64,000 nt of DNA from Styela clava (lineage: Eukaryota): positions 14,818,001-14,882,000 of the forward strand of contig NC_135252.1 of NCBI RefSeq assembly GCF_964204865.1, in the 5' to 3' direction. Positions 23,144 to 55,764 of this stretch are shown piece after piece. The notes beneath the pieces are model-generated. The model saw only the letters and a list, made by a program, of their open reading frames with translations. It had not been told where the DNA came from and ran no database searches. Numbering within the stretch: the stretch's first letter is position 1; the number at the start of each line of letters is the position of its first letter. The position numbers and the translations under genes were made by a program.

Positions 23144-24034
23144 TCAAAATCTAGGTAAATAGCAATGACATGCCACATCAACTTGTATCAGTTTTTCGTA
23201 GCACCCATAATTGGTACACTTGTCGAACGAAGGAATATACGATTTTCTGTAGATGACTGAAACGACAACAGGAATTGGCTTTGACACGCCATTCCACGTA
23301 TGTAGTCCAGTGTTTAGATCGATGCATCCTTTGCAAAGACAAGAAGCTTCAGTTATCACTTGCGGAAATCTAAAACAGAAAAATACACATATATTGGGAG
23401 GTAATCTTTGAACTTGAAAAAATGTACTCATTAATTTGATTCCCAATGAATTTTCTTAATTTGACCCCAGAAGTTGAAAATTCCTAAACTTATTTCGATC
23501 TGGCCTTTAACATATATGCCAACACAGATGATGTGTGATCATAGTATTTGTTCTGATTTATTGTTGATTGATCACTTTGTCCATTCTTTGAACACGTTAT
23601 ACCAACCTTGTTTCGTCGTAATGAGAACAATAATCCCACGGTGAGATACTCCTAAGATTTTCCTTCTTGACCCATTTCGGAAGATTTTCTCTGCAACTGG
23701 ATCTCGGTCTGCATCCGAGTGAACTTCCTACTTGATTATCCATTGTAATCAGTCTAGCCTGGAACACCTCAAACGGTTTAGCATAGGATGGTGCATCAGA
23801 ATATTTCTTGTAATATTTAATTCGTGGTCTCACTTTACCGTTCATCCTTATATTTGTTGGATTGTGAGCTACGCGTTGGCAAATACTTTTCAAATTTTGT
23901 GTCCTGAACATGTTACATTGCGACAGTATTGATGAATGAACTGGGACTTTACCCTTCGTGTATCTCTCAGTATAAACAATATTTCCTTGCATAAAACATG
24001 AAAACCCGAGGACTAAATGAATGAATTGATTCAT
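23144..24034 (-). CDS. IL17: IL-17-like cytokine 1; exons 23607-24034, 23144-23369 (217 aa)
   Basis: Signal-peptide-like MNQFIHLVLGFSCFMQG; RSISPWDYCSHYDETR|FPQVITEASCLCKGC...VACHC. These are IL-17 family hallmarks (RSxSPW, RxP, CxCxGC, terminal CxC). Phase-2 GT..AG intron. Confidence 0.93.
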
Positions 24035-24379
24035 TATATTTACGTTATTCTGAAACATGAAAAAGTATTTAAGTCTGAAAATATTTTACAAAAAGTTGAT
24101 AATATGATAAAACAACAAGAATAATACTCCTCCCAAAAATAAAAATCGAATAGGCCTTCATGAAAAAGGGATCACTAGGGATAACTTACAACAACTATTT
24201 GAGAACATATATATTCACAAATTGCACATTTATCAATCAGTAATCTGCGATTAAAAACGTATCGAAAAGTCACAATATCTGAAGCTGTAGTAATAAATAT
24301 ACTCTCAACAAAACTTTTAGTTTATGGAACAATTTTCGTCACCTATTGCTACAAACTCTCTGCATCATCTTCGCTTGGA

Positions 24380-24388
24380 TTTTATATA
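24380..24388 (-). promoter_or_regulatory. Putative TATA box of IL17-like 1, with a short noncoding first exon (donor near 24342, acceptor at 24050)
   Basis: TATATAAAA on the minus strand ~40 nt upstream of an AG|GTGACG donor; TTTCAG acceptor 15 nt before the ATG. Confidence 0.4.
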
Positions 24389-25464
24389 CGGATCAAGGAG
24401 TGCAAACAAAGTCGATCAAAAGATGGGTGGTTCGGCAAATGAGACCGCAAAATTTCGTCGATAACCTTGTAGTATAAGACTTGTTTTAATACAAACTAGG
24501 AAACTCTTCTCGGTGAACAGCACTGAATTTTATTGACAGTTCGACAAACTGACAATAATCGAATAAAAGCTAATAACTAGCATTAATTTTTTTTACCACA
24601 AAATGTTATTCAAGACAAATCCAGTTGATTTAGTCTACCTTTAATCTCCGTCCAGTATGGTAAAACAATGAAGATTTGTTCTTATAGCAATAAAACTCGT
24701 GGGTGTATTATAACTTCTATCTATAATTTTAATGTTAACTAAGTATAGGACTGATAGCCTAATTACATATTTCCAGAATTTATATAATTATTATTTAATC
24801 TGCATATTAACTAATGAACGGATAAATTAGCGCTACCGCAACAAAGAACTTCAAAATAAAGTACGTAATAAGGAACAAATTAAGATTGTGATTGCAGCAA
24901 CAGAAATGTTAATGACATGGCAGATTTTGAACAAAGTGGGATTCAATGATGGTTGTCTCCAAATTTAAACTTTGAATAATTTTCTCTTGTCTTCGCACGC
25001 GACGGTAATTGGTATATATATTAAGTAATTATTTTGTGAGTTTTTAGGAATAAAGCAAGGAGCTCAAATACATAATTATATGTATCAAACAAGTTTATTT
25101 TTATGTACTGATTACTTTGTAAATCTATTGAAACCCAGTACAAACACATGCAGATACTCACATATATATATTAAACAACTTTCCATGAGAAGATAATAAG
25201 AAATTTGCAATAAATAGGAGTAAATCAAGTTAAAGATACTGTACTAAAATACCAGTGTTTTTATTCACCACAAACTAATCATTTAAATGTTCTGAGTGAA
25301 TGAACGCGACTTTTGAGGAAAATGCAGCCAGTCCGAAGCTGCTTTATCTCTCCATGCACCAACGAGTAAAACAATGCTTTCGCACAAAATCTCCAACAAA
25401 ATATCAATGTTGGAATTCCGCGCTGGATAAACATGGGCATAATGTCAACTTAATTTGTAATACT

Positions 25465-25875
25465 TATTGGACACGAAGTGGACATAACGATCGTTCCAAC
25501 ATTATGTTGGTCTTGTTGTTGTTGTTGTTGTTCTTTGACACTTTTTGGACATCTAGTGGAAAATATAAAAAAAACGCTTTTCTCTTTCATTACTGGACCG
25601 ATTGCTTCGAAATTTTTACAGGTTAAAGATGAAGTTTTTCTCCAGAAAGCTATTACTTTTATTTAGTTCAAATATTTCTGTTAGCTCTGTGAGATTTTTT
25701 TTGTTTGCTATGACGTCATTAAACGTTCTGCGGACATCGGACGCCATTTTGTGTTCTACTGTACTGCTTCGCTTGGTGTGAATATATTTGTAGACTGTGA
25801 TCTGACGGTACGGTTAACCGTACTGTACTGCGAACAGACGTGTCCATATATTTGGGCGTAGCTCTCTTGTCCTAA
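25465..25875 (+). mobile_element. DINE-1/Helentron-associated-like short interspersed repeat (copy 1)
   Basis: Subterminal inverted motif GGACACG...CGTGTCC, an internal (TTG)n microsatellite and a 3' end CTCTCTTGT. The core (CCGATTGCTTCGAAATTTT...AGAAAGCTATTACTTTTATTTA...ATGACGTCAT...CGTGTCCATATATTTG) is shared with ~43413-43645. Confidence 0.5.
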
Positions 25876-27118
25876 TTTCATATGTGAGAAGTCTATTATG
25901 GATGTTACCACGAACTTAGGCGGTATACCTACAGGTTAGTATACATCAGCATCCTTTGAGTTACTTTGAAGAGGCAATTTAAAAATAATTACTATAATTT
26001 GCCAGAAAAATATACTAATTAGTAAACCCGTTGCGACATTATGCTTTTCATCATCGAGAGATAATTTGAATGGCACATTATTGAGTTATAAGGCAAGGCA
26101 GAGCACTGGTTTGTCACAAAATCCTGAAACAGAAATTTAACGATGATTTTCTACAAAATATTCAAGCATGTTGTACAATCAGTATACAATTTGGAAGCCA
26201 AACAAACGATTCACTTCAAAAAGTCAGTCACCATGATGTAACTTACAACGCAAATGGTCAACAACTCCAGCACACGAACGGATGAATGTTTACAACATTG
26301 GAAATTATAGATGACAAGTTTTATTGAATATAAATTGAAATTTGCTTGAAAATACAAAAACGTGATAATATTCCCCAGATTAAATGAACAAGGTAATGAT
26401 TTAACAAGAAGATAATCCCTCTTATAATTGATCTTGTAACGCCATCCAACAGAATTAGCCGCGCGTAATAATGAAATAGTGTAAAAATTGGAGCGTATCA
26501 GAACATAAATGCAGAGGGCGATGCTGGTTCAGCTTTATACAAAACTTTCAACTGACTGCCTGATAAACGATATTGCGGTTGTGACTTGTGAAAACCGATA
26601 ATGTTTAGGTAGACATAGTCTTGTTTAGTTTATTGAAATCGAACAAAGTTGGATCGGAGCAGATTCTAATCCAAGATGACCAATAAGATGCAACAATACT
26701 GCAATAAACACGGGACCATGTAAAATGAAATTGATACTGGACTAAAAGTTCCGTTAGACTACGCGCATGTCGTCTCTGACTATTCACATGGACAAGAAAA
26801 GTTTACAACTTGGGCATTGAATATCCTAGTATTTGGGTTGATATAGAGATGTCCATGCAAATAAATTCTGGTCGAGAGCACTAGATTCTTAATTCTACAC
26901 GGCTAATATGGGCAGACTACCTCAATAAACAATTGACTATCGTACAATAGAATTTATCGCGAATAAAAAAGTAAAATTAAAACGTGCCGAAAGGGAAAGC
27001 ATATTCACCGTGGTCAGTCCATCTGTAATTTCATCGGGGAACTGTTTCAGGTAAAATACTGTATCTAACTAAGTTAAATATATTTGTACTTTTTGTTTTC
27101 TAACGTTAAGTATCCATA

Positions 27119-28148
27119 ATGTACGCCCCAGATTATCTTCTCATTATATCCCTCTGTTGGTCAAGTTCGTTTGGAAAATTGTTACTACCAAAATTTAATG
27201 AGCGCATGTGTGAACAGTTCAAGACCGAAAAACTCAGAAATGCTTGTCAGCGAACTTACGGGAGTACCCATCATGCTCAGTTACAAAGTCATGCATACAT
27301 GAAATCAATGAAGGATCTATTTAAAGAGTATGAGGTTGGAAAATTCATGCTATCTGATCTTTCTACAAAACTTACGTCACACCGTCACCAACTCAGTATA
27401 CAACGAAATGATGCAGACAACGGGGTAGGCGTTTCTCTGAGGTGTCGAACAAATACTCCGTGTCCCATACCTCCAAACATTCCCCAAAATAAAGAAAACC
27501 TACGTAGCAGTGCTCCCTGGGACTACTGTTTACACTTTAAAGCTACACGGTAAGTGACTTAAAATTATTTCAGACTAGATATTCTGAATTCGAATTTTCC
27601 ATATCTACAGACATAATCATTTTAAGTTTTTAAGTCTAGTTTAAATCAAATGAAACCTACTACTTTGACTCGGATTTTCACATAGAATAAGAAATTGTTT
27701 TGTTAATCATGAGCTGCTGGCCTCATCTACTAACGCCTTGTCCGGAGCGTAATAGGTAAGGTAGGCAATACCTGAACATGAAAATTCCCCTCTTTTCTAA
27801 TTCAAAAGTGGCCCCAGAAGATAATTAAGATAAGCTAGTCACCAAAATTTGATTTATTTGCATCCAGCTGCCACGTCATTCCATATCTTTCAGATTTTAT
27901 TCTCTTTTTTAAGATTTCCGCAGTGGCTCAATGAAGCAGCATGTCTGTGTAAAGGATGCATTGATTTCAATACCGGACAACATGACAGAAACGTTGTATC
28001 TAAACCTGTTACAGTCATGATAACTGTTATCATGCGTTCACGTGCCATAAGCTCGTTTGCGGAGTGTACAAATCTTACTTGCTGGGAAAAGCAAATTAGT
28101 GTAGATGTTGGATGCCATTGTCATATACCAACATGGCCGGAACACTAA
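27119..28148 (+). CDS. IL17: IL-17-like cytokine 2; exons 27119-27549, 27914-28148 (221 aa)
   Basis: Signal peptide MYAPDYLLIISLCWSSSFG; KENLRSSAPWDYCLHFKATR|FPQWLNEAACLCKGC...VGCHC; phase-2 intron. Confidence 0.93.
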
Positions 28149-28461
28149 ATAAATGGAACCTGACATGGCAAAATTTATTTTGAACTCTGCTGTCTCATCT
28201 ATTTGATATTCTTGGTAATCGTCATGGTATTTCAAATGTATATTAATAAACACTAATTGAAAATTTGTTGTACAAGTGCTTTTTTATTAGATGTCGAGGC
28301 CTGACATGTGCATCATTATTATCATTACAATCGCACGGCATAAACAAATTAACGGTACTTGCTCTGATTCGTTTAAAAAGAAAAAATTGTATGAGAACCG
28401 TACATATCACTTTATCTATAAAACATTTCATTCGTAGAATGAGGAAGTATAACGTCTGAAT

Positions 28462-30349
28462 CAGTGCTCGTTAACCGGGTGTATAGTGGGCTACACCCCA
28501 GGGTGTACCAGAAAGTTCAGGGGGCGTACCACTTCAATAGGGTTTACCGTTTCGAATGTTGTAAGCTACACACTCAACACATGATATGCTAATTAAATAC
28601 GCTAAAATTGGCAATGGTATGTGATATCTATCTAACTAACCTACACGTGTCAATTTATACATAATCTATGTCTGGTATTTTCTGATATCTGCTTATCATG
28701 ATTTTAAAGTCACGATATCCTTTCGTAACAGTTCGATAATTTCTTAGCGGTACTTCTGTGAGACTGGGACTGACACTGGAGTTCATCCAGGTTGGCACTG
28801 GAAGAAGTAGTCTAATAAGCTGAGAATGTGATTATGGCGTGATTGTTTCGGCCATCTACATCAACATTTCGTTTTTTTTTATCACGCATGTATAAAGTCT
28901 TGCGCTCAGGCGGACATCGCTGTTTGTTTAAGTTTTTTTTTTCGCGGAACTGCGCGTTCTGTTCGACAAACTCGAAAGCTACTGTGCGATCATCGGCGAA
29001 GAGACGCTGAGGAAAGTTATAGGAACTATTTTGCAGCCCAAATTTCCAAATTAGCTTCATTTTGATTATTATCTCGTATCGTCTTTGAATTTTGATCGTC
29101 CTTATCGCCAACGTAAAATAAAAAGTGAACAATATCTTTGCCACTAGTTTCGGGGTTCGTTGTATTATTCTGTCGTGCCTACGTTATTTTCCGTTAAAAA
29201 AACACATAACGCATTATAAACGCAAAACACATTATAACGCAAATATAACACTCAATTTTAACGTCTTTGTCTGGTAGCGAAAAGTGTGTGCAGTGTGTGT
29301 TTGTCAGAAATACGCAAGTGCTTTCTACTGTCCGAGCGTTTAATTCAGCAACGCGCCATGTTCAGGTCACGTGTTACCAGACATTAGAACAGTAAACTGC
29401 AAATATAACGCTCAATTTTGAGGTCTTTGTCTGTTAGCGAAAGATGTGTGTGCAGATTCTCGTGTGTTCTTCAGAAATCCGCAAATGCGTTTTGCTGTCG
29501 ATACGATATTCGAATATTTTGTCCAGCTCTATCCTAAACTTGATTTTATGTATTTTGTAAATTCTAACGTGAATCGGAACTTGGCTGGTGTTCAAGTTTT
29601 GTAAAAACGTTTGCGGCCGCAATGAATTTCCCCATCTGAAAGTGACCCGCGATATCTTGATACATCATACGGCTGATACTATTGCTATCTGTTATATGTA
29701 TTGGCGGATAGGCATAATCTTAAGTTTTATGGCTCATTTATCAGTAAGTTTTCGAATAAATATTTAAGCATGTCGGAGCGAAAGTATACCTTCTAATTCT
29801 AATAGATTCGCCCGGTGTTTGCGACAATGCAGTGGCGGCAATAATTAAAGCCTTTCAGCTCTGACGGTAGACGCAAATTCTCTCGCGATTTTGCATGCAA
29901 TTAATACGTTGTTAGTGCTCATAATTAATATGTTAAAACTTTGCATGGCAGTCTAAAAATGGATATAGTAGCATAAAGGACTTCCATACCGCGTTTTTTT
30001 GTGGCATTGTTCTCCGCCCCAAAGAACGGGATTTTGTTGGTGGTACGCGGCTGGAGTAAAATACACAAAATGGTTTGTTGTCAGTAAAAGGTTGAAACCA
30101 CTGCTCTAATGAAAGGGGCACTGGAAACAAGAGTATTACTTCGCTTTGCACAAATGCCCGACGGAATCCAAGAGCAACGTTCACATTATCTAAATATCGA
30201 ACTATTGCGTCGACATAAACATATATATATAACATCTGAACAATTAATGAGTTGTTTTACGTATTAAAAATGTAGGATGGGCGGGATGTACCAGACTTTG
30301 AGAAAGGGTTGAAAGGGTGTACTATTAAAAAAAAAGTTGACGAGCACTG
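28462..30349. mobile_element. ~1.9-kb hAT-like non-autonomous element (degenerate), containing a second hAT-like end at ~30086-30103
   Basis: TIR CAGTGCTCGTTAAC (28462) and GTTGACGAGCACTG (ends 30349), with GGGTGTAC-type subterminal motifs. The TSD is not conserved (GTCTGAAT vs GCTAATGC). Internal AAAAGGTTGAAACCACTG resembles another hAT terminus. An internal direct repeat lies at ~29243 and ~29401. Confidence 0.65.
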
Positions 30350-35074: not shown

Positions 35075-36538
35075 ATGATTCAATTAAAATACGTCGGCAT
35101 CTTATTGGTAACAATATTAGTTCTCGCAAGATCAGAAGGCGATAGAATTCGAAGATCCTATGCACCGAATTGGAACATGTGGCGCGGAATTATCAACCAA
35201 CCTTACATGTACCCATTGAACTACCAGTATGCCTACCCAATAATACAACGTGTGCACCCTACAATTTCTACGAAAAGGGTAACAACGGAGCAGATCACGA
35301 GTCAGCCAACGACACCCACCATAGCCAATACCATAAGCACTACTACAACAATAGAACCTACTACAACAGCAGAACCTACCACAACGAATACAACGACAAC
35401 TGTTACAAATGACTCCCAGAATGAATTTGAACGCAGTTTTACTTTAACGCCAACTGCCAACAACAGTAATATTTTGCAAAAGTGTAAAAACGTTCGATTC
35501 AAGTCTCTCAGAGATTCTTGCATAAGAGTAGCACAAAATCCAATTCTTAAAGGTATGGACGACGTAAAGGGATATATAGGAGAAGAAGAAAACAATCAAC
35601 CGACTCTGCTTATAACGAGAGGATTCTCATTTCTCAAGCCAACGCTTGGGACACAAACAATATGCAATGAACCAGAAACCTGCCCCGATTATACAGTGGA
35701 CGACAGACCAACTCGGAAAAATCTATTAAGTTTATCGCCGTGGGTCATGTGTCGCGAATATGACCCGAATAGGTAAGAATGGTGGAGTCTGAACTTTTTG
35801 TTGTAGTATTTATTTTATTAGCGTTAAAACTATTAAAATACTACTTATTGGTGGATGAATATCATTAATATGATATGAACTGGTAGCGGTTTTTAAATCA
35901 TGTATCAGTCAAATTATAACAGTAACATAATATAAAAATAGCTAGTCGCCGTCAATTGATTCGTGAAATATGTAAGTAATAATGAAATACTGTGGTCAAA
36001 TTTATTGAATTAATTTGTTTGACGTAAAATGTGCACAGAAATCTTTTTGGCCAAACGTGACTTAACGATGAAGCCACAGGGTGCCATGTACATAGTTACC
36101 TATAAATATTCTACGCGTGCTCAGTAGTTCCTTGTTTTCCTGGGGGTTCGTTATTTGGTTTCCGTAAAGTGCGTGGATTTCATAAGCTGGACTTGATCTC
36201 TTATTACGTACATTGAATGAATAGTTTTCGCTGTGGGGATATTGTAGAATATACTTATCGAAACAATGTAATTATAATGAAATTGTGATTTTTGTTATAG
36301 ATTCCCGCAATGGATTAACGTGGCAAAATGTCTTTGTGGAGGTTGCATTAACTACCGGACTGGACAAGAAGAAGTCGGTGACGTGGTGTCCCAAGAATTG
36401 AGAGTGGACATTAATGTTCTCAAAAAAGACATTTTGACCCGAACATTTGGTCAATGCACACGTAAAACTTGCCGAGAGGAGGTACAAAGTGTAGCGATAG
36501 GATGTCATTGCGCATTAGCTGATTTACGTGTAAAGTGA
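35075..36538 (+). CDS. IL17: IL-17-like cytokine 3 with mucin-like Thr-rich N-terminal extension; exons 35075-35772, 36301-36538 (311 aa)
   Basis: Signal peptide MIQLKYVGILLVTILVLARS, then RIRR and a T/P-rich tract; LLSLSPWVMCREYDPNR|FPQWINVAKCLCGGC...IGCHC. Confidence 0.93.
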
Positions 36539-37475: not shown

Positions 37476-38931
37476 ATGAAATGTATTCTAATATTAAATC
37501 TGATGCTCTATTGGCTAATCACCATTGTTACGGGAAAATGTATTTCTACACCGGAGGGAACGAAATGCACGCCGGATACAACAATATACAATCCACTGAA
37601 TGGACCGCCCGGTGGTCTTTTTGACAAAAGAGAGCAGCAACCAATGAAGGCAACTCCTCACCATGAACAGCTATATAAGCAGTGCCTTGATATTCGGAAC
37701 CGGGATATGCGTAGTGCCTGTATAAGAATATCTAAGAATCCCATTCTAAAAAATATGGGAAACGGCACAAAAGGTGTTATAGACGACAGAGAATTGACTT
37801 TTCCATTTATTATCGGTCGAGGATTACACTTCCAATTTATTTCGGAACACGTGGTTCAAAACGTTTGTGATCAAAAAATGAATTGCCCAGATGGAGAAGA
37901 GTTGAAGAGAACTGATGATAATATGTCTAGTTTGTCTCCGTGGAAATATTGTATGCAGTACGATTCTTTAAGGTATGTACGCGTTTCATTATAACAACAA
38001 TTTTCTGGACTGAACCGTGTAATACCGGACATGTGGTATTTGTCGTCGAATGAATTGAAAATGATACGATACAATTGTACATCATAGGAATGGCGGGTTT
38101 ACTGCATTAGATCAGTAAAAAATAATAAAAAAAAACAGCACTCCACATCATGTTATACTCTAATAGCCACACCCTTAATTGATATGGCGTTGGGTTACCC
38201 GAAGTATGAATTATACCTTGAATATTCTAAAGTTTAGTTCAAAAATTCACATCGAAAAAAAAGGTTAAATAAAGAGTAAATATTTTATTTTACCGACTTC
38301 AATTTGATGAGGTAGATAAATACATATGCAAAGTTTGAAGCGATGTGCGTTTAATGTTGTTTAATTGGCTGCGTTAGGAACGCCCACATATTAATTATTT
38401 ATAACAAATATGCTATCTGCTCCTCATTGTCTATTTTTCGGTAAAATACGGAATCCGCGAAAACTTTGATTTTCTTATTATAACCTAGTACAGAAATAAA
38501 TCCCCCGACACTCTTAAATTAGTAATAAGTAAGTAACTGAAAGTAATAATACGCGGATCTTTTTGACTGCTGATATTTATCTCTGGTAATACCTTGTACA
38601 TATATTATGAATACACGGTATTCATCACACGGTATCGTGTGTGAAGTATTTCTTACATTCATAAAATAATTTTACTATCTTTTGCTATTTCAGGTATCCC
38701 CAGTGGATAAATGTCGCTCAGTGCTTATGTAGCGGATGCTTACATCCATTCACTGGAGCTGAAATTCATGGCAACGTTCTATCCAAGGAAATTCACGTTG
38801 AGATAAATGTTCTTCGAAAATTCTCGTTAAAGCATCCATTCAGCAAGTGTAATCGAAAAATCTGCGAAGAAACGACTCAAAAAATACCAATCGGATGTCA
38901 TTGCCAAATTGCCAATGTTCAGAATGTATAA
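37476..38931 (+). CDS. IL17: IL-17-like cytokine 4; exons 37476-37972, 38694-38931 (244 aa)
   Basis: Signal peptide MKCILILNLMLYWLITIVTG; MSSLSPWKYCMQYDSLR|YPQWINVAQCLCSGCLHPFTG...FSKCNRKICEETTQKIPIGCHCQIANVQNV*. Exon 2 is not in the ORF track and was translated manually. Confidence 0.93.
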
Positions 38932-41595: not shown

Positions 41596-42842
41596 ATGAC
41601 ATTCGCGAGTTTGTGGTTGGTAGTTATACTTCTAATTAATGTGATTAGTGTCGGGGCTGCCCAAGAAAAGAAAGGATCCACCAGCAAACTACGAACGATT
41701 CCAAAACGAATGCATTTCCAAGTCAGATCTCAATGTAAACTATTCAAAACTTGGAAAATGAAACAGCTTTGTAATCAAGTTGCATCTGATCCCAATATCG
41801 TGAAAATGGGCCGTAAAGTACGAGCATTTGTTAAAAATAACGATGAGAAAAGGTTCAGCAAAAGGATGCGTAAATTATCATCAAACGCTAGAGCTCTTAC
41901 TATTCCCACTCCTCCAGTAGATGGATTTACTATGCCTTCTATTTCTCGGACGTTATCATCAAATACTGGATTTCAATGTACGAAATCCTGTCCAAGTTAT
42001 AGTTCACTTTTGTCGGGAAAAACTCCAATTCAAAGAAGCTTTTCACCTTGGGAGTCATGCGCCCACTACGATCCTCTAAGGTAAGTTTCCTTTTAGAGAA
42101 TGATTTTGAACACAAAATTCTACGTTGAGGGAAAGAATTGATATTGCCACTTACAACATAATAGTATTAGATCCTGTTTAAAATAATTCACTACATTTGC
42201 TCAATTACTTTTATAGAGTAACTCACCATTTACAATTGTACTGAGTAATTTGTACCCAAAAAACAAACCCATGCCATTTCGAACACATTCTAGAGAGTCA
42301 AAAATTTGGGGAGAGCGTCTTAGATTCCTAAAACTTTTGGATCATACACAAATAGAAGTTCAAGATTACAAGTGTTAAATAAATTTTCTTCATTTTCATG
42401 AAGGAAATTAACATATTTATGACTTCTGTTTTTAGGTCACCCTGGAATATAAATGATTTTACATGATGAATAAACTATACATGATTTTTATGATTGAAAG
42501 GAATATTTATCGATAAACCCGTAAACAAAACCTATATCGGTTGTTCCGCAGTATCGGTGTATCTGACAAATAGATTTCTATCTACCTCATTTCTTAATTT
42601 TACTCTGCAGATTTCCTCAATGGCTGAAGCTTGGGTTTTGCTCTTGTAAAGGATGCATAAATCCAGAAACTAAAAATGAAGATATGTCATTCGTGTCGGA
42701 ACCAATCACCGTAAACATCACCGTGTTGAAACGAAAGCCAGGCGTTTCATTTAGTGAATGTAAGAATCCGAATGTGGGATGTGAAAAAGCATTACTAGAA
42801 GTTACTCTAGGTTGCACATGTGTATTACCAAAAGGAACATAA
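41596..42842 (+). CDS. IL17: IL-17-like cytokine 5 (basic N-terminal region); exons 41596-42080, 42611-42842 (238 aa)
   Basis: Signal peptide MTFASLWLVVILLINVISVGAA; QRSFSPWESCAHYDPLR|FPQWLKLGFCSCKGCINPET...FSECKNPNVGCEKALLEVTLGCTCVLPKGT*. Exon 2 was translated manually. Confidence 0.93.
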
Positions 42843-44542: not shown

Positions 44543-45218
44543 CAGGGGTCTCCAACTCAAAACATGTCGCGGGCCACTTTTTGAAATTGATTGGCCACGC
44601 GGGCCGCAAATCAAGAAATTAAGTACAAAAATGAGTATCAAAATGTATTGTGTTGAAATTACACTTGAATCTTACAGCAAACGAGACATGAAACATATTC
44701 ATGTACTTGTGTTGGATATTTGGTTCCGATGTTTGGCCTTTATTTTAGTTTGCTAGTCTTAATTAAGACAGCATGCAAATGCTCGTCCGTTAGTCGTGTG
44801 CGGAGGGCTAACTTTCATAGTTAAAATAAAAATTATCGCAAATGTAAGAACTGCCAAACATCGCAGCAGGTATGCAACGTGAATGTGCAATTAGCTTCGC
44901 AAACTATTCTTCGGGCATAATGAACTGACCGAAACTCGTTTATTTCGTCACAAGGAACATGCGAAATGAAATTATTGTATTCATTATTGAAATGTAACAA
45001 TAGAATAAAACATGAACGTGGTAAAGTGGAATAACAATGGAAAATTCTTGCTCCACTTATTACAGTTTGTCGGACCGGATTCTTGATGATAAATGACACG
45101 ATAAAAGTTTACATCGTACTATTTTAGTTTATGTGGGAAAATCCCAATCATGACGCGGGCCGCAAAAAATGCCTGGCGAACCGCATGCGGCCCGCGGGCC
45201 GCGTGTTGGAGACCCCCG
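44543..45218 (-). mobile_element. 676-bp hAT/Charlie-like deletion derivative with a transposase C-terminal remnant
   Basis: TIRs CAGGGGTCTCCAAC and GTTGGAGACCCCCG; perfect 8-bp TSD CTCTACAG (44535-44542, 45219-45226); GCGGGCC(G/A)C subterminal repeats. A minus-strand remnant reads FGSSYICDNF...RTRLTDEHLHAVL, resembling the hAT C-terminal dimerisation region. Confidence 0.9.
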
Positions 45219-46373: not shown

Positions 46374-46380
46374 TATAAAA
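46374..46380 (+). promoter_or_regulatory. Putative TATA box of IL17-like 6
   Basis: TATAAAAGG ~185 nt upstream of the ATG at 46560; the AT-rich background limits significance. Confidence 0.3.
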
Positions 46381-46559
46381 GGCAGTGACAAAAAATCTCT
46401 TACAAACTGGCTAAGTTTACTTTACAACAGGGCAAAAACCCGAGTTATACAATTTAAAATTGATTTATTTTTCACGAAAAGGTTATATTTATATTATATA
46501 GAATTGGATATTTTACGTTCCGTACTTGCAACTAGCAGTCAATTAACGGAATCAAAAGC

Positions 46560-47811
46560 ATGAGCAATTTGATATCACTGTTATGTATCTTGCTATTTTC
46601 AATTAAAATTGGAACATCACAACCAACACATGAATCGAACCACCAACACAACGACACAACACATGAATCGAATCAAGTCGATACAGAGAACTTCGTGCTT
46701 ACAGCTACAACAGCAAAGCCAGAAGAGGAGACAACGTTATCTATTTTGGAACAATTTCGCAGAGCTCTTCCAACTGTTCCAACTGCCAAGCCTGCTAAGA
46801 TTCCTCGAATTCCGGCCCACAAAGGAATAATTAAAAAGTGCAAATTGCTCCCAACGTACAGACTTCGAGAATCCTGCAAATCAATAGCGGAGAATGGGCT
46901 TATATACAGTATGGAGAAAAATGTTTTAGCATTTGTAAACAGAACCGAAGAAAAAGAATTTTACAAGAAAGAATCGGTCACTGGGGAAAGATCATTATCA
47001 TTTGGCATTGCTCTTCCGGGAGAGCAGAACTGTGATGCGACATGTCCTTCTGGAAAAGAATGGTCGACTGCCACTGAAAAGCATGAACGCAGTTTTTCAC
47101 CATGGGGATATTGTGATAACTACGACCCAGATAGGTAAATACAATTTCATTTACTCAATACATCCAAGTTAATACTATTACTATCGGAAATTGATCAATA
47201 TCCAGGTCAAGAGAGTTGAAATTTATTTGACGGCGATTGGTTTGCGGTTTGTTTTTCAATATAGCGCCGCGTTCTAATACTAATTCCAACTCTTAAGCTG
47301 CAGACACGGTCAAAAATTTAGACCTCTACGCGAAAGAATTTACCACGGAATAGCATTTGCAACGACAGCGTTTAAATTGTCTTAATTTTTTGAAACGCAA
47401 AATCTAATCTAAAATTATTCGTGCCTGTTTAGAAGTTCTGTTCATTGTTTATCAAAACTGTAAACAAAATTATAAAATAGCCATCAAAACAATTGTACCC
47501 TATTACGCAAAACATGCAAAATAATAAAAAAATTTGATTCGTGACATATATACCATTTAACTGAATAAATGCATATTTTCAGACTTCCACAGTGGATATC
47601 TTATGCTAAATGTAAATGCAAAGGATGTATGGATCCCAACACGCTTGAAGAAAATCTCAGCTACAGTTCAATAGAACTAAAGACGGCTATTCCGGTTTTA
47701 AGAAAAGAGCAAGAAGTGATGGATTTTCAAGACTGTACGAACAAAAAATGCAAAGAAAGTGTCGTTGAAATCGTTATCGGTTGTTATTGCTTTTTGCCAT
47801 TTATATCCTAA
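46560..47811 (+). CDS. IL17: IL-17-like cytokine 6; exons 46560-47134, 47583-47811 (267 aa)
   Basis: Signal peptide MSNLISLLCILLFSIKIGTS; THESN repeated twice and a T/P-rich linker; ERSFSPWGYCDNYDPDR|LPQWISYAKCKCKGC...IGCYC. Confidence 0.93.
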
Positions 47812-48948
47812 CTCAACTTTGTCTGAATTGTTGATAGCTGAGGCTTGTTACTGTAAACACATTCAATTTTTGGTGAAATGAGAAAAAAAATTATTTATTG
47901 TCGCCTGCATGAAAAACTTGCATCTGCATTTTCTCCGCCCTATCGAGAGTTTCATAAACACTACGATAAACTAAGTAAACGCTCTCGTACAGCATTCCCA
48001 CTCCAAATTTGTTTGTAAGATTTGACATTTGATTCGTGTTCATTCAAAAAAAAATAGCCGTAATTTTAGGGCTGAAAATACCAAATCAAGCTTACGCAGA
48101 ATAGCATGTTGAGTGTAAACAGCCAAATGCAGATTTACTTAACGCAAACTTGATTTCTCAGTCAGTTCCATATTTTAGTCCATAGTATCAGAAATACGAT
48201 AAATCTGTTATACATAAGATATAGATGCTAATGGACATTTTCACAAATTCGTGTATTCAACGGACTGCAAAGTTAATATTTGTTTGTATATTATGTTGTT
48301 TGCTTCTGGTATATCATGACGAATACTATCCAACAAACTTGCATCTTTGTACCAGTGTTGATCATATTTAGATATTCAAATTATATATACGATAATAAAA
48401 AAACAGAATGCACGATAAGACCTTTCTCAACGAAATGTAGGATGCAGAATACAACAATCTCATTACACCTTTTCATTCTACAAATGCATCACAGTCATCG
48501 TTCAGGTGAATTTTGTCGAGTCTCGGGCCAACCGGTATCCGATGTTTTGGTATCCGCATATTGGTCACAGGGTCATATCCAAAACCCATTGTGTGACAGT
48601 AATTGCTTTCAACTTTTCTACCGGTAATCGAGCCTTGCTTCGAATAATAAAAAAAGTGAATTTGGTTGAATACTTCAATTGAATGGGTATCTAGTCTTTA
48701 GCAAGTGGAACTGAATCCTAATATTACACAAATCTTATGTAAATTATGCCACAAACATTAAAGCGTGATACTAGTCTTCGGACACCTATCCATTTTATAG
48801 ACTTGAATGCATTTATTATGAGCTTGTCATAGAACAGTTTCGAATTGACTGCTCTAAACTTTGTATAGGAGTTTATTGAAAATACAAGACCGTGAAGTAG
48901 GCTACTGTTATTCATTAGGCTTTACTGAGATTGTCAAGTCATCGTGGT

Positions 48949-50860
48949 CTATTCGAATGAAAACCTTCTACAATGACACCCGATAGGAATCTCAATGACT
49001 TTCAGCTCGCAATCTCCTGTCTTAGAATCACAACTCGAGAACGTTATCGATGCAGATTTTCTCATTATCACTGATTCTTCCGTTGTCAATAGTTCAGATG
49101 CTAAGCTAAAATCTTCGTTACCGGTAGCAATATTAATGCATCCTTGGCAGAGACATCGGGCAAACAAAATCTTTTCCGGGAATCTAATAAAAATAAATGG
49201 AAACTTTTAAGATTTCGTGTTTTTAAAAAAATAATATGCTGTCTAGTTATGATACTTGTGATAATGTAATAATAATAATAAAATTTGTGTGATAAATATA
49301 CCGCTTACAAGCAAAAATGCTAAAATTGAGGTAGTTTATGAAGTATAGCATAGAAACTGAAAGGTTATTACGTATAAACGATATCGACTTACATGTTCCC
49401 AAAATTGAGAACAATTTATTCCAAATGTTAACAAACAAGATAATAACCTGAGTGGGTCATAGTCGACGTAGTAATCCCAAGGAGAAATGCTCATTTGATG
49501 TTTCTCTTTTCCCAATAAACTCAGATCACACGTTGGTCTTCCTAAAATTTGAATTTTTGAATGCTTTTATTGATAATCATAATAAAAATATTCGAAAACA
49601 ATTTGAAGATAAAAAAAGACAAAGCTAATCTCAAATGATATATCAATATTTGAACCCAATATTTCGAATAGACAAATGTTGTTCTTTGGACGTATTATCT
49701 TTAAATTATTTTTACTGAAACGTTTATTTTAACTAAGACTGTTTAGGGTGGATTATCACATGTTGAAGCGTTTTGGCATATGAAAAAAAACGATGAAAAC
49801 ATAAATTTTCAATTTTAAACTCTTTCATCTTTATATTAAAATACTTTAGTAAATATCACTCTAAAACTTTGACCAGAAAACCAGTTTGAAAGCATTTATT
49901 TTTGGTCATTTTTTCAAATAAAACTTCTCTAAATTTCAACATTTGCCTTTTTGTCTGAAAAACCTCGTATTCACATATAATAGGTTTGAGAATGAGGATG
50001 GAAAGATATATGTCAGTTCACCAGACTTTAAATTGGCAGTCATAAACTTTGCAACATATCACCAAATTCAATACAATATGGATTTAAATTCGAAATACTA
50101 CTCATGTAGCATCGTTACTCCGATGTTATTTACCTGCAGGTTTGCCCAATTTCACGGGTATTCCGGGAAAAATCGCTTCTAGATTCTCTATTCTAGCAGG
50201 AATCTTCTCTATCATCGTGATTGTAGTCGGCGGTGGTGTTTCAGAAACTACCAACATTCCTCGCGAACCGTCGTCCCTACCTGGTTGAATCGAATTATAA
50301 TGCCAAGAATTTTCTTCTGGCCTTTCAATGCGTAGATCGTTTCGCCCTTTTCCAGTGATCCTATCATACAAAGGATTTGTTTGTTCATTCTCATCACTAA
50401 TATTCGTATTCTCTGACAAAACTTCAGATTCGCGGACGCGAAGATTTTGTATTGCGGGATATTCGATTTCGTATTCGATTTCCACTATGTCATTTCCATT
50501 ATAGTCACACGGTCTTTCCACATTCTTTATAGCGGTATCCTCACTTAACACTCCAGTTATGGGGTTGTGAATATTTTGTATTCCGGGTTTTTCAATTTCA
50601 TCTTCGCTTTCCACTGGCAATACCGGGTCATGATCATATGACTCAATTAACTCACTCTTGAAATGCGGACTTAATGAAATATATCGACAGGCCTGACGCA
50701 GTTTTCTGTCCACGAACATTTTGCACTTTTTCCTTATTTCCGAACTCCCTAATTTCTTATAACCTTTGACAGAAGAAAATCGATTTACAGAACACCAACA
50801 GACTGAAAATAGCGTCAGTAATAACACCAAACGAACAAAATAAAAATATTTCTTCACCAT
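48949..50860 (-). CDS. IL17: IL-17-like cytokine 7 with a long acidic repeat insertion; exons 50134-50860, 49448-49541, 48949-49183 (351 aa)
   Basis: Signal peptide MVKKYFYFVRLVLLLTLFSVCWC. An extra 94-nt exon encodes (G)RPTCDLSLLGKEKHQMSISPWDYYVDYDPL(R). The last exon reads FPEKILFARCLCQGC...IGCHC. All splice phases match. Confidence 0.9.
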
Positions 50861-53088
50861 TTCTGTTTGAGGTTATATCCAACTATTTCACAATAGACAC
50901 GAGATTACCCATTAGAATCAGTTCTGCGTTTCGAAATCGTAAAATCTTGAAGATTATGTTGTTTACGGCATTTGCGTCACGCTGGCCACCCTTTCCCCCG
51001 ATCACAGCAAAGCGTGACGGCGAAGCTTCCATGCGTAAATCACTACTTATAAAATGCTTAGTCCTGGTGGCATCATCAAATCCATCGCCTGTTCCAAAAT
51101 AAATTTTCTCAATGTCTCGCGTAGTTTCATTAGTATGATATCGAGTTGAACAAGTATAAACCGCTAGATAAAAATATATTTGGACTGAAATTAACTATAA
51201 TTTCAACTGAAGGGCGAGAAAGATAAACATTGAGTAAAATTGTATGCAATCAGATCTTCAAATCATTGACAAAATTAGTAATCACTGAAAGCTTATTGGC
51301 GACACCGAGTGACTAAACTTCGTTGAAGAATGCAAAGGTCAACTATTACGAAATCTTTAAATCCATTTTCTGAACGCTTCGCAAAGAAGATCGGTACAAT
51401 CACAAGACTTACATATATCAGATTATTTTTAGACAAAACAAAATCGACGGAAAGTGCACGAACCGCGAATTTGGAATTTGAAAGCCAAATCTACTTTACG
51501 TAAAGATAGTATATAGAAGTAACACGTTTACGCCGTTAACTTGGTAGTCTGCGTAAAAATAAACAAACGAATTATAAGGCCATTAATGAACGAAACATTA
51601 ACGTAAAGTAATTGCAAGATATTTACTGCTGTCACGACTTTCTATCCTTAATAGTATGAGTAATAAAAAAGAGTGATTTTCGAAACGTTAGATATTTTAT
51701 TCTTGCTCACAAGATTTATAATTAATCCACGTTTAATTTTAATATGAAGGATTTTTATATGAAATTATCTCAAATCTAAGAAAAACAATTAGTTTTCATG
51801 ATATTCAACTTATAAATAATTACTTGTCCAGACATATCATATCACTTCGACTTTTCTAGGCAAACGAGTTGGTATTGAATATGCTGGATAATTTTGTTCA
51901 GACCAATGTGAAAGTCAAGTAAAAAAAAATCATCGAGTTTGTTTGTCAAACTGGTGATCATTGTGGATTAAATTTGAAGCACAGATACTTTGAAAATGTT
52001 TCAAGGCGTGGTCGTGAAATTCTAACCAAAATCGTATAGTAATATTACATATGATGTTGTTGCAGTTCAGTTTCATTGCTTCTCCTCGTCCTTCATGGTA
52101 TCAATACAGTATTGCATTTTCTCTGTGAAATACCATTATTATATTTCATTTTCGCAATTTATTTTTTTATCGAAATGTCGGACTCGGTCAACTGTTTTTC
52201 TGAAAACATCTATTTGTTTCTATGTTCGTCATAAGCCTATCAGACACTGATGCATCACACATGTCTCCCAACTATCCTTCTAGCATAAATACTCGTCGAG
52301 TAATGCAACATTCAGTATTCGGATTGGACAAGGAATTGTTTTGGTAAAGCAGTATTACGAACAAATTTTATTATTATTTGTACCACCGCGCAGTATCTAA
52401 ACAATATATATATCTCATCTATGCCTCCAGTACTTCATGTCCAATGCTCTCATGCCACAAAACACGACTTCGACGTAAATCTAAGTAAGTCAATAAATTT
52501 AAAATGCAAACAACGACTTATATTTTTTCATTGTTATTCCTAATCTGCTTTTTTGTACCTAAATTCGCAAAAAAACACGAACGAAACAGTTGAAGCACGC
52601 TGTGGTATTTTATTTAATTACTGAAATCAACGAACTTGGAAAAATAATAATTTACTGAACTATATAACCAAAGTCAAAAAATATCATAAATATGAAAAAG
52701 CAAAAGTAAAAATAAATTATTTTGGACATAACATAAACACAAATGCAGGGCATTCATAAATGCGGAATATTGTGCGCATAATCAGAAAATAAATAATAAA
52801 TATCGGACGTACAGTGGGCTTATGAAAAGTTCATTCGCAAAAATGGTTTGTGCTTTAGAAGGAGTAACTTGTGGCCAGTCGTGGAAATTGGCCAATCGCT
52901 CTTCAGTCTTACAATGGCAATTTTGCCTCTGGGCAAGAACAAGATACGTGATATAGTTACGAGGATACCAATGCCCACCAAAGAAATTTACGACATTACT
53001 TAATTAGATTCTGTTCCTCGCTTTCACTCGTCTTCCACTGAATGAAACAACGATTCTTCGAATATGCTCATTCCAGTTGCAAGGTCGT

Positions 53089-55764
53089 TCAGGGACTAAG
53101 CTCAACTGGAATTGCACAATGACAACCAACCGCAATATCCTCGTCGGAAGCGTAGCACGTACTATCGGTGCATTGACGAAATGATGAATGAGTAGAATTC
53201 ATGCGAAGAAATCTGACTTTAACTTTAATTTCTTTTGAAACAAAAGCTTTATTTTCTTTTCCTGAGCGTTGGTCTATACACCCCTTGCACATACATCTTG
53301 CGACAGGAATCCACTGGGGATACCTAAATGGTTGGAACAAAAGTAGGGATTAGAATTAAACAATGAAATAGAACGAAGATGGTGTTTTAGGATACGATAT
53401 ACACTATTAATTGCGTAATATCATCTCACACATTTTCCAAATGGCATAAAATACACATTAATTACCGCATCTCACGTTTTACAAAGATTGCGTTAGTGAT
53501 GCAACTTTTACTCTTTAGAAATTGACCTTCTGACCGAAAAACGATATAAATGACGTCACAATGCCCTTATGTATAAATATATTATGACGTGTAGCATTTA
53601 TATAGAAATATATTCATTGTATATATAAACCAATTATGCAATATGCAAATGGGACACTCTAACACACCAAAATTGCAAATTTATATTGAATTGACTATTC
53701 ATTACTTGAACTTGATGAGTGATTTATAATTTTATTCATGTAAGTAATGAGAAAAGGCCAAATCAATTTTTGAAATAATCGACGGATCTGATTCCATAAT
53801 TTACGTGCAGAAGCTAATGATCAACGCAAAACGAAACCTGATATTTGCTAGTTCAGAAGTCTTATTACATTGAGCCAAGATGTTTGATTAAACGACCCTT
53901 GTATACGAAACTAATATGTTAGGCAAGTTGAATCCATGATTTCGGTGTATTCTCATGCCAAATTTAAATGAAATGATGTAGATTTTACGTTAAAATTTCG
54001 GGATATTTAGTCATGGTAATGCTATAGAATATATGTATTGTTAATTCGAAATGGGAAAGAGTATTAATGAACAAAACGAAGGAAATACAATATCGTTTAA
54101 TGAATTCGTATATAAATGTAATTGTGAAAGGTTAAAAATGCATAATCCGGATGTTGTACATTTGTATATTTTAGTTCGTAAGTGCGCTATTGATTGACCG
54201 TATTAGTTGAACATGTTTCATCCGTGGCCTACGCTTTGTTTAATTTTTGTGTACTCATTCGATAAACTTAGAAAAATCATCATTTTATGATGCTTCGGAA
54301 TTCGACACGTTTGTTTGCATAAAATGTCAACAATTACTTTGATATTTTAATTTTTGTTCCGATATGCAAATTAAAAATTTGAAATTAGAAATTATATTTC
54401 GTGCATATAATAAAAATGAATTAAATTCAAAAGAATATGAAAGCGAGGAATATTTTCGATTATATTATTGGAATTATTTTAGTCTAAACATATCACGTTT
54501 TTCTTTATTAATTTCGATATACGTTGTTTTTTTCTGTGGATTTTAATATTTACGAAATACTTATGGGCGTTTCTGGAGACAGCGAGGCCGTAATACACCA
54601 TGCCAACTTCCAAAAGTTTACTTCTTGGAACAAATCTGACGTAAAGTTATAATTTTTCGGGGCAATACATTACGTACATTCATCCAATTATCTAGTTTAA
54701 GGCTTCCGATATCGCTTACAATGAGCAGATTCAACGACAAAATTGTTGATAAAATGGCTTCGAAGACAGACATTTTATTGTTAAAGTATCGTAAATAAAA
54801 TCAGGGATTTTATCAAAATGCTGATTGTTAAAAAAACGTTGTTTAGCTGCGATAGCGTTTTACGGCATATGACGTGATTTTTTTTATTCAAAAAGTATTT
54901 TACCGTTTTCCAATCTCAACTTTGGAGGTGTGGCCCCATATTACCGACACCCATTTTTGTAGGACCATGACTATGCATTGTAAAATTGTTTGATGATCGG
55001 TAATGCTAATCTTAATAGAGATTTAAACTGCCTGTGACATAACCATTGACATTTGTCGTAAATATGCTGCGTACGAGGTACGTGCATATCTTAAAGAGTA
55101 ATCACATGTCCCTCCTTGCATTGAAATACAAACTAGTGTCTATAAATAAACGTACTTTCCTAAAAACAGAGTTAGGTACCATGGTAAAGATTCAATACAA
55201 CATTGATATGGTATCACATTGTTGTAAAAATAAAACTGACTTCTAAAAATAATATTAAACGTGTATTTACCTTTGTACGTCAAAATCTGGCATCATTTTC
55301 CAAGGGGATAAACTTCTATCGTGAGGTTGTACGTACGGGGTTTGATGTGAATAATCCGGACATTTTAACCCTTGTTGTCCTTCCAGAGGTATATCGCTCT
55401 TTGTTATCTGAGTCGTCCACGGCAGTTGTTTGAGATGTCCACGAACTTTTTCTTTCATTGACACAATAATAGGATTTTCAGCAATTCTCTCACACAATTG
55501 TCTTAATCTTGGCGTTGGAAAGTATTCACACTGTCTCAATAAACCTTCGTGATTTTTGACATCTGGTCGTGATCTCAACAAACTTTCCCTGGTAGTATAT
55601 TCTGGCATCGTAATAGTTGATTGAGTGTTCTGTATTTGAAAGTGTGATTCTGGGTAGAGAATACTTTTGGCAGAAACTGAATTTTTCAGTATGTGCACTA
55701 ACATCCACAATATACCCAATCTCAATACTCTAATCACGTTCATGACACTTCGCGTTCTAGACAT
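53089..55764 (-). CDS. IL17: IL-17-like cytokine 8; exons 55271-55764, 53089-53323 (242 aa; alternative ATG at 55743)
   Basis: Hydrophobic signal VLRLGILWMLVHILKNSVSA; DRSLSPWKMMPDFDVQR|YPQWIPVARCMCKGC...VGCHC; 1.95-kb phase-2 intron. Confidence 0.93.

What the first reader, a model, noticed from the sequence alone, without database searches (positions are those of the whole stretch)
23850..55560. Novel conserved N-terminal C-x11-C helical module present in all eight IL-17-like proteins
Upstream of the IL-17 domain every paralogue carries the same motif, consensus H..I/L..C..F....LR..C.RIA.NP.I..M...VR. Copies: CNMFRTQNLKSICQRVAHNP (1), CEQFKTEKLRNACQRTY (2), CKNVRFKSLRDSCIRVAQNP (3), CLDIRNRDMRSACIRISKNP (4), CKLFKTWKMKQLCNQVASDP (5), CKLLPTYRLRESCKSIAENG (6), CKMFVDRKLRQACRYISLSP (7), CEYFPTPRLRQLCERIAENP (8). 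The 11-residue spacing is invariant while the flanks are unalignable and vary by more than 100 aa. I do not know this module from vertebrate IL-17A-F. Inference: it is a disulfide-stapled, basic, amphipathic helical hairpin. It could act as a pro-domain, an oligomerisation or heparan-binding module, or a membrane-active effector fused to the cytokine, defining a two-domain IL-17 subfamily.
Basis: partly seen in the sequence, partly recalled or inferred. Interest (0 to 1): 0.9.

Follow-up and report, generated by a model that had tools for sequence, protein, structure and literature searches.

The report
Helical N-terminal cap on sea-squirt IL-17s
Eight neighbouring IL-17 cytokine genes of the sea squirt Styela clava share a conserved two-cysteine helical segment ahead of the cytokine domain; it is predicted to fold back onto the cytokine core, which makes it a lineage-specific variant of a known cytokine family and not a new kind of protein.

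Summary
The window is Styela clava chromosome DNA with eight intact IL-17 genes, seven of two exons and g7 of three. Each first exon carries a C-x11-C segment, consensus h...C..F...+LR..C..IA.NPh...M...hR.

A profile of it finds nine places in the 377-Mb genome, all IL-17 genes, out of at least 32 IL-17 knot exons. So it marks a subfamily, not all IL-17s. An exhaustive search of 1.84 billion proteins gave 31 hits: 30 IL-17-like sequences and one repeat artefact. The named ones are all S. clava. The unnamed ones interleave as orthologues of single paralogues.

Pfam, PDB sequences and fold searches do not recognise the segment. AlphaFold2 predicts helix-loop-helix at pLDDT about 90, in the whole protein and alone. 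A controlled complex prediction docks it on the core (0.68, best control 0.16). The docking surface, mapped by alignment, overlaps receptor-binding region I of human IL-17A.

It co-occurs with a core loop cysteine pair (10/10 against 0/18) and has no conserved furin site. My reading is an integral docked cap, not a fused effector.

Ciona IL-17-2 also has C-x11-C. Other ascidian IL-17s have a different N-terminal region with a furin-type site.

The scan had already noted other IL-17-like clusters in this genome. Verdict: new variant of a known kind, moderate interest.

The parts
23807..23953 (-). C-x11-C module of gene 1
27173..27319 (+). C-x11-C module of gene 2 (degenerate after the second Cys)
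35447..35593 (+). C-x11-C module of gene 3
37647..37793 (+). C-x11-C module of gene 4
41698..41844 (+). C-x11-C module of gene 5. This is the copy that was modelled: residues 35-83 of P0033.
46803..46949 (+). C-x11-C module of gene 6
50615..50761 (-). C-x11-C module of gene 7 (degenerate after the second Cys)
55420..55566 (-). C-x11-C module of gene 8
23607..24058 (-). Gene 1, exon 1: signal peptide, module, linker, C...C, SPW motif. The start codon is uncertain.
23144..23369 (-). Gene 1, IL-17 knot exon
27119..27549 (+). Gene 2, exon 1 (NCBI protein P0004, named 'interleukin-17C-like')
27914..28148 (+). Gene 2, IL-17 knot exon
35075..35772 (+). Gene 3, exon 1 (NCBI protein P0007). A Thr/Pro-rich stretch precedes the module.
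36301..36538 (+). Gene 3, IL-17 knot exon
37476..37972 (+). Gene 4, exon 1
38694..38931 (+). Gene 4, IL-17 knot exon (P0028 covers it)
41596..42080 (+). Gene 5, exon 1 (NCBI protein P0033)
42611..42842 (+). Gene 5, IL-17 knot exon
46560..47134 (+). Gene 6, exon 1 (NCBI protein P0006)
47583..47811 (+). Gene 6, IL-17 knot exon
50132..50860 (-). Gene 7, exon 1: module followed by a long acidic insert (NCBI protein P0003). The exon end is approximate.
49447..49548 (-). Gene 7, middle exon with the Cys and SPW motif. Coordinates are approximate.
48949..49183 (-). Gene 7, IL-17 knot exon
55271..55764 (-). Gene 8, exon 1 (NCBI protein P0001, 100% identical)
53089..53323 (-). Gene 8, IL-17 knot exon

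Best explanation
The segment is a lineage-specific N-terminal 'cap' of a subfamily of ascidian IL-17 cytokines. It is about 35 residues long and folds as helix-loop-helix. The first Cys closes helix 1. The second Cys lies in helix 2, which ends at a conserved N-P.

I read it as staying in the secreted protein and folding back onto the IL-17 core. Its conserved hydrophobic face is h9, F16, L21, I28, A29, P32, h33, M37 and h41 of the module. That face packs on three parts of the core: the start of strand 1 (the subfamily-specific [FY]PQW motif), strand 3, and the lengthened strand 3-4 loop, which in this subfamily alone carries a Cys pair preceded by a conserved Phe.

Mapped by alignment onto human IL-17A, this surface overlaps 'region I'. 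That is the pocket around Tyr62 and Phe110 where an alpha-helical peptide of IL-17RA binds, and where IL-17F places its own N-terminal Phe-Phe motif.

The cap would therefore stabilise the incomplete (T2-type) knot, and it would shape or gate receptor binding. It would take the place of the strand-0 N-terminal extension of vertebrate IL-17A/F.

Shown here: conservation, restriction to the subfamily, absence from known families, co-occurrence with the core features.

Predicted, not measured: the helix-loop-helix fold and the docking.

Inferred: retention in the mature protein, the C-C staple inside the module, and the effect on the receptor.
For: 1. Conservation and specificity. There are 9 hits in the genome, all in IL-17 genes. 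The exhaustive profile search gave 31 hits in 1.84e9 representatives. All but one repeat artefact have the module followed by the SPW motif of IL-17 where the sequence reaches that far, or are truncated copies (P0023, P0028).
2. Age. Unnamed sequences group with single S. clava paralogues: g8 with P0002 and P0015, g2 with P0024, g1 with P0010 and P0014, all on starred branches.
3. Fold. AlphaFold2 on full-length g5 gives H41-47, a loop, H53-63 and H66-70 at pLDDT 89-92. Residues 99-124 are disordered and the core is above 90. The 49-residue module alone gives the same elements at pLDDT about 90.
4. Docking. The module (residues 36-98) against two copies of the core (122-238) scored ipSAE 0.68, with the best of 3 controls at 0.16. 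The runs shared at least 78% of contacts and the partner pLDDT was at least 64. On microbes, the tool's mark was reached by 51 of 78 solved complexes and 2 of 108 mismatched pairs. The tool warns that the counts hold only roughly here, because this job is not a pair of single chains and the protein is eukaryotic.
5. Interface. Module residues 43, 50, 54-55, 59, 62-63, 65-67, 71 and 75-76 are the conserved columns of the alignment. The core side is 163-169, 196-201, 208-215, 219, 221 and 226.
6. Co-variation. The loop Cys pair and a loop about 10 residues longer occur in 10 of 10 module genes and 0 of 18 non-module S. clava paralogues.
7. No conserved RxK/RR site lies between module and core. 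The sister subfamily has one.
8. Mapping to IL-17A uses the alignment and the region I description in PMC4869123.
9. For the internal staple: Cys47 is not in the predicted interface. Ciona IL-17-2 has C-x11-C but no loop Cys pair.
Against: - No coordinates or PAE were available, so Cys-Cys distances were never measured.
- The complex test used ESMFold2 on cut fragments of one polypeptide. That is outside its calibration and shows model confidence only.
- The co-occurrence with the loop Cys pair is a single phylogenetic event. It fits the rival pairing, in which the module cysteines bond to the loop cysteines, equally well.
- The linker is long and disordered, and it holds dibasic sites in some paralogues (g5, the C10 copy, g1, g6). 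Cleavage cannot be excluded.
Confidence: 0.55

Rival explanations
1. The segment is a pro-domain. It helps the knot fold or keeps the cytokine latent, and a convertase or another protease removes it in the disordered linker, as in neurotrophins, Spätzle and TGF-beta.
For: - The linker between module and core is disordered: residues 99-124 have pLDDT below 50.
- Some paralogues have dibasic runs there.
- Sister ascidian IL-17s have an N-terminal region followed by RxKR|S directly before the CP motif: S. clava loci L029, L033, L034, L035 and L043, and Ciona IL-17-1, IL-17-3 and 203738.
- Docking over the receptor pocket would suit latency.
Against: - No convertase site is conserved across the eight genes or their homologues.
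- The module is not detectably related to the furin-type N-terminal region: hhalign probability is 1.1%.
- The core features that co-vary with it suggest a permanent partner.
Confidence: 0.2
2. The two module cysteines do not bond to each other. Each bonds to one cysteine of the strand 3-4 loop, in the same or the other chain. This tethers the N-terminal extension covalently, as Cys10-Cys106 does in human IL-17A.
For: - The module and the loop Cys pair co-occur perfectly, 10/10 against 0/18.
- In human IL-17A, the loop Cys106 is linked to Cys10 of the N-terminal peptide (PMC4869123).
- Loop residues 208-215 and 219 and module Cys59 are in the predicted interface.
Against: - Cys47 is absent from the predicted interface, and no Cys-Cys pair is among the 25 most confident contacts.
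- The isolated module folds confidently without the core.
- Ciona IL-17-2 has C-x11-C with no loop Cys, though its homology is unproven.
Confidence: 0.3
3. The segment is an independent basic amphipathic effector or matrix-binding element (antimicrobial, membrane-active or heparan-binding) that is tethered to the cytokine or released from it.
For: - Net charge is 0 to +8, and +1 to +7 in the eight window copies.
- A conserved Arg (module position 22) lies outside the predicted interface.
- The weak, non-significant fold neighbours are disulfide-stapled helical hairpin peptides and saposin.
Against: - The conserved positions are hydrophobic and are predicted to be buried against the core.
- The charge is not conserved: it is 0 to +1 in the g8 group.
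- The module never occurs outside IL-17 genes.
- The fold matches are at chance level: E above 4 and Z below 2.8.
Confidence: 0.07

Closest known systems
N-terminal extension of human IL-17A and IL-17F (strand 0, Cys10-Cys106, Phe-Phe motif of IL-17F)
   Same: - It lies between the signal peptide and the knot.
- It contacts the region around Tyr62, Arg101 and Phe110 (region I).
- In IL-17A it is linked to the strand 3-4 loop by a cysteine. The ascidian loop also carries cysteines.
   Different: - There is no sequence match: PDB alignments of P0001 start at residue 148, or 126 for IL-25, which is well after the module.
- The vertebrate element is a beta strand plus a disordered peptide. This one is a confidently predicted helix-loop-helix with two cysteines.
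Ciona intestinalis IL-17-2 (NP_001123346.1, sequence in S1 Dataset of PMC4517768)
   Same: It has C-x11-C shortly after the signal peptide. The second Cys is followed by R-S-I. There is no furin site before the CP motif. It is an ascidian IL-17 of the same CLCxGC knot type.
   Different: Only a few positions agree when aligned by eye. It has no strand 3-4 loop Cys pair. It was not among the hits at E up to 0.001 in the exhaustive search. Homology is possible but not shown.
Furin-type N-terminal region of other ascidian IL-17s (Ciona IL-17-1, IL-17-3 and 203738; S. clava clusters on C5, C2 and C19)
   Same: It is a Cys-containing, helix-prone region N-terminal of the same CP...SPW...knot architecture in the same genomes.
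   Different: The motif is different (FRK.C..VF..DY.KWSEKMLAD..F..LEV). It is followed by RxKR|S. The knot exon has no loop Cys pair. hhalign probability against the module is 1.1%.
Helical ligands of IL-17A region I: the IL-17RA peptide 27-LDDSWI and the HAP peptide antagonist (PMC4869123)
   Same: An amphipathic alpha helix docks on the pocket formed by the start of strand 1, the end of strand 3 and the start of strand 4. The predicted site of the module maps to this pocket.
   Different: Those ligands act in trans (a receptor, a synthetic peptide). Here the helix belongs to the cytokine chain itself. The mapping rests on an alignment and a predicted complex.
Disulfide-stapled helical hairpins (alpha-hairpinins such as Tk-hefu, nigellin and vicilin leader peptides; twin Cx9C CHCH domains)
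   Same: Two short helices joined by a loop, with cysteines that could staple them.
   Different: Those families need two CxxxC or two Cx9C motifs and two disulfides. This segment has one C-x11-C. Structural matches are at chance level.

Membership tests
IL-17 cytokine family (Pfam PF06083) | Profile match above the curated cut-off | tested here: met
   Scores are 63-72 bits against a cut-off of 24 for P0033, P0001, P0005, P0006, P0007 and P0022. All eight knot exons are over the cut-off in the genome search.
IL-17 cytokine family (Pfam PF06083) | Knot cysteines C-x4-C ... C-x-C on strands 2 and 4 | tested here: met
   C.C..C ... C.C is present in all eight knot exons.
IL-17 cytokine family (Pfam PF06083) | IL-17 fold | tested here: met
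   In the AlphaFold2 model the core has pLDDT above 90. Foldseek top hits are IL-17A, IL-17F and IL-25 at E 1e-8 to 2e-7, with target TM 0.6-0.8.
IL-17 cytokine family (Pfam PF06083) | Disulfide-linked or obligate homodimer that signals through IL-17 receptors | not tested
   The dimer was assumed when setting up.
Vertebrate-type IL-17 N-terminal extension | Sequence similarity of the module to the N-termini of solved IL-17A, IL-17F or IL-25 | tested here: not met
   phmmer alignments begin after the module. The module profile finds no IL-17 chain in the PDB at E up to 10.
Vertebrate-type IL-17 N-terminal extension | Similarity to the N-terminal regions of vertebrate IL-17B, C and D | tested here: inconclusive
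   No vertebrate protein reached E 0.001 in the exhaustive profile search. No direct profile comparison could be run, because no tool returned those sequences.
Convertase-processed pro-domain (neurotrophin, Spätzle or TGF-beta type) | Conserved RxK/RR site between the N-terminal region and the mature domain | tested here: not met
   No such site is conserved across the nine S. clava genes or their homologues. It is present in the other ascidian subfamily.
Alpha-hairpinin / CHCH helical hairpins | Two CxxxC or two Cx9C motifs that form two disulfides | tested here: not met
   The module has only two cysteines, 11 residues apart. Fold matches have E above 4 and Z below 2.8.

The most novel reading that the evidence does not exclude
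The cap is an uncleaved, built-in gate on the receptor-binding pocket. It occupies region I of its own cytokine and must be displaced, or is read by a matching receptor. Ascidians would then run two regulatory designs side by side: furin-processed pro-IL-17s and capped IL-17s. That would extend to IL-17 the pro-domain logic of its neurotrophin and Spätzle relatives.
Probability: 0.15. Interest if true: 0.7.

Novelty: new variant of a known kind. Interest (0 to 1): 0.4.

Why it matters
IL-17 research treats the ligand as a C-terminal knot domain and says little about what precedes it. Here a chordate sister group of the vertebrates has kept, through several speciations, a folded N-terminal element. 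That element is predicted to sit on the surface that vertebrate IL-17A uses for its receptor.

If this is confirmed, it gives a natural example of how N-terminal extensions tune or gate IL-17 signalling, and a handle for pairing the many ascidian IL-17 ligands with their few receptors. It is also a natural counterpart of the helical peptide antagonists designed against human IL-17A.

It is not a new class of molecule, and nothing here has been measured at the bench.

Tried and rejected
- Word-indexed homologue searches found only S. clava proteins and one unnamed sequence, so they gave no taxonomic range.
- The cluster look-up gave no names for ten non-Styela hits.
- The ESM Atlas search with the module gave no usable hit.
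- Pfam on the exon-1 ORFs gave only sub-threshold noise: TEP1_N, Tcf25, Nuf2, Med13_C and Il13Ra_Ig.
- The PDB sequence search with the module profile gave only chance matches: cerebellin, uL30 and DEK, at E 0.04 to 0.3.
- Fold searches with the isolated module found nothing above chance.
- The profile comparison of the module with the furin-type N-terminal region gave probability 1.1%, so common origin is not supported.
- P0016 is a 1402-residue repetitive protein that matches only profile positions 96-108, twenty times. I rejected it as an artefact.
- The knot-exon tree could not resolve whether the module genes form one clade. It needs 2 changes, and the starred branches allow 1.
Full-length proteins used were NCBI models returned by searches, and everything else was handled exon by exon by reference.
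- The Ciona sequences were read in a paper's supplement and compared by eye only.

Full report
**What the window is.** GC content is about 33% throughout. One of them is 100% identical to an NCBI protein of the ascidian Styela clava (P0001). Others match S. clava proteins P0003, P0004 (named 'interleukin-17C-like'), P0006, P0007 and P0033. The window is G000:C3:14818001-14882000. A single N run lies at 7758-7897, outside the finding, and was left alone.

**Gene structure.**
- Each gene has a first exon that encodes a signal peptide, a variable stretch, the C-x11-C segment, a linker, a C..CP element and the R-S-x-S-P-W motif.
- A last exon encodes the rest of the IL-17 knot.
- Gene 7 has an extra middle exon.
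- The seven genes checked use GT-AG with a phase-2 intron that splits the same Arg codon; the g7 junctions were not checked.
- Exactly eight IL-17 knot exons lie in the window.
- The NCBI full-length models score 63-72 bits on Pfam IL17, against a cut-off of 24. The match covers only the last 85 or so residues.
- phmmer against PDB sequences finds IL-17A, IL-17F and IL-25. The alignments start at residue 148 of P0001, or 126 for IL-25, which is after the module at 79-115.

**The observation.** The C-x11-C coordinates are as. The alignment gives the consensus h...C..F...+LR..C..IA.NPh...M...hR, and only the two cysteines are invariant. A profile of the eight, searched over the whole genome in six frames, scores the eight at E 4e-22 to 3e-17. 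It finds a ninth copy on C10 at E 3.5e-15. Nothing else scores better than E 0.58. The ninth copy is also an IL-17 gene, a close relative of gene 5.

**It marks a subfamily.** The same genome has at least 32 IL-17 knot exons in several clusters. This agrees with earlier scan notes of a large IL-17 expansion in this genome. Only nine carry the module.

Many of the others have a different first exon. It has the motif FRK.C..VF..DY.KWSEKMLAD..F..LEV, then RxKR|S directly before the CP element. A profile-profile comparison finds no relation between that region and the module: probability 1.1%.

The knot exons of the module genes differ from the rest in two ways. They have a C-x4-6-C pair in a strand 3-4 loop that is about ten residues longer: 10 of 10 module genes against 0 of 18 others. 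Most also have an [FY]PQW motif at the start of strand 1.

A tree of the knot exons alone clusters the module genes but does not resolve them as one clade.

**Range.** An exhaustive HMMER search with a profile running from the module to the end of exon 1 gave 31 hits at E up to 0.001 among 1.84 billion representatives.
- One is a repetitive artefact.
- The others all have the C-x11-C segment (one has x13), followed by the SPW motif where the sequence reaches that far, or are truncated copies such as P0023 and P0028.
- The named ones are all S. clava. The rest come from unnamed Logan or ENA assemblies.
- In a tree they interleave with the S. clava paralogues as orthologues of g8, g2 and g1 on starred branches, and group with g3 with weaker support. 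The paralogues are therefore older than the splits between these species.
- No vertebrate, amphioxus or Ciona protein reached the threshold.

**Ciona, read by eye.** The S1 dataset of PMC4517768 prints the Ciona intestinalis IL-17s.
- IL-17-2 has C-x11-C shortly after its signal peptide. It has no furin site and no loop Cys pair. Only a few other positions agree with the module, so homology is possible but unproven.
- IL-17-1 has C-x9-C and then RHKR|S.
- IL-17-3 and model 203738 have C-x5-C, a region like the S. clava furin-type motif, and R[TE]KR|S before CP.
- Cysteine-containing N-terminal regions are therefore common in ascidian IL-17s. The papers I read discuss only the knot domain, and a search for IL-17 with furin or prodomain found nothing relevant.

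**Structure.** AlphaFold2 on gene 5 (P0033), with a 54-row alignment built from exon-level references and returned proteins, gave:
- a confident IL-17 core;
- a disordered linker at residues 99-124;
- for the module, helix 41-47 ending at Cys47, a five-residue loop, helix 53-63 containing Cys59, and helix 66-70, at pLDDT 89-92.

Foldseek confirms the IL-17 fold. The 49-residue module alone gave the same elements at pLDDT about 90. This suggests a self-contained small fold. Fold searches with it found nothing above chance. The best rows are disulfide-stapled hairpin peptides and saposin A, at E above 4 and Z below 2.8.

**Docking.** I asked whether the module (36-98) binds two copies of the core (122-238).
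- The score was 0.68, against 0.16 for the best of three controls.
- The runs shared at least 78% of contacts, and the partner pLDDT was at least 64.
- On microbes, the tool's mark was reached by 51 of 78 solved complexes and 2 of 108 mismatched pairs.
- The tool warns that the counts hold only roughly here, since this job is not a pair of single chains and the protein is eukaryotic.
- The module residues in the interface (43, 50, 54-55, 59, 62-63, 65-67, 71, 75-76) are the conserved columns of the family alignment.
- The core residues are 163-169 (FPQWLKL), 196-201 (strand 3), 208-215 and 219 (the loop with the Cys pair and the conserved Phe209, which touches Phe50), 221 and 226.
- Cys47 is not in the interface.

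**Mapping to human IL-17A.** By the alignment, F163 corresponds to Tyr62, V200-L201 to Val98-Leu99, and C219 roughly to Phe110. PMC4869123 describes region I of the IL-17RA site as a pocket lined by Tyr62, Pro59, Arg101 and Phe110. That pocket takes an alpha-helical receptor peptide or the helix of the HAP antagonist, and in IL-17F it holds the cytokine's own N-terminal Phe-Phe motif. The same paper states that Cys106 of the 3-4 loop is bonded to Cys10 of the N-terminal peptide. The predicted seat of the module therefore overlaps the receptor-binding region I. This step is inference from an alignment and a prediction.

**Reading.** The best-supported account is an integral N-terminal cap that docks on the core, is held by a disulfide, and shapes or gates receptor binding (confidence 0.55).
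- Whether the two cysteines bond to each other or to the loop pair is open. I favour the internal staple at about 60:40. The reasons are that Cys47 lies outside the interface, the module folds alone, and Ciona IL-17-2 lacks loop cysteines.
- A cleaved pro-domain stays possible (0.2), because the linker is disordered and the sister subfamily is furin-type.
- A free antimicrobial or heparan-binding effector is unlikely (0.07).

**Verdict.** This is a new variant of a known kind. Interest is moderate, because the element is conserved, undescribed in the papers I could search, and predicted to sit on a functionally important surface. Nothing has been measured, and the family itself is well known.

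Noticed in passing
L029:1185-1442(+), L035:1185-1442(+), L043:1090-1374(+), L033:1788-2072(-), L034:2038-2328(-) (S. clava chromosomes C5, C2, C19): Another S. clava IL-17 subfamily has a conserved N-terminal region (FRK.C..VF..DY.KWSEKMLAD..F..LEV) followed by RxKR|S directly before the CP motif. Ciona IL-17-1, IL-17-3 and model 203738 show the same layout. This looks like a furin-processed pro-IL-17, which the papers I searched do not discuss.
   Followed up: partly
window 35075-35450 (gene 3) and 46620-46800 (gene 6): Long Thr/Pro-rich, mucin-like stretches lie between the signal peptide and the module in some paralogues and in several unnamed orthologues (P0013, P0018, P0019). This explains the length differences of more than 100 residues.
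   Followed up: no
window 50126-50620 (gene 7, - strand): Gene 7 carries an acidic insert of about 190 residues between the module and the IL-17 domain, has an extra exon, and has an odd number of cysteines. The NCBI protein P0003 differs from the window translation at several residues, probably as an allele.
   Followed up: no
L031, L036, L038, L039, L042 (chromosomes C2, C8, C10): A very divergent IL-17 group has C-A-C-T-H-C or similar in place of C-L-C-x-G-C. It is separated by a long, fully supported branch in the knot-exon tree.
   Followed up: no
L033 (C2:14565588-14565779): An IL-17 knot exon with two in-frame stops (one TGA, one TAA). It is probably a pseudogene.
   Followed up: no
window 7758-7897: A run of 140 N, either an assembly gap or masked. 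It lies outside the finding and was not touched.
   Followed up: no
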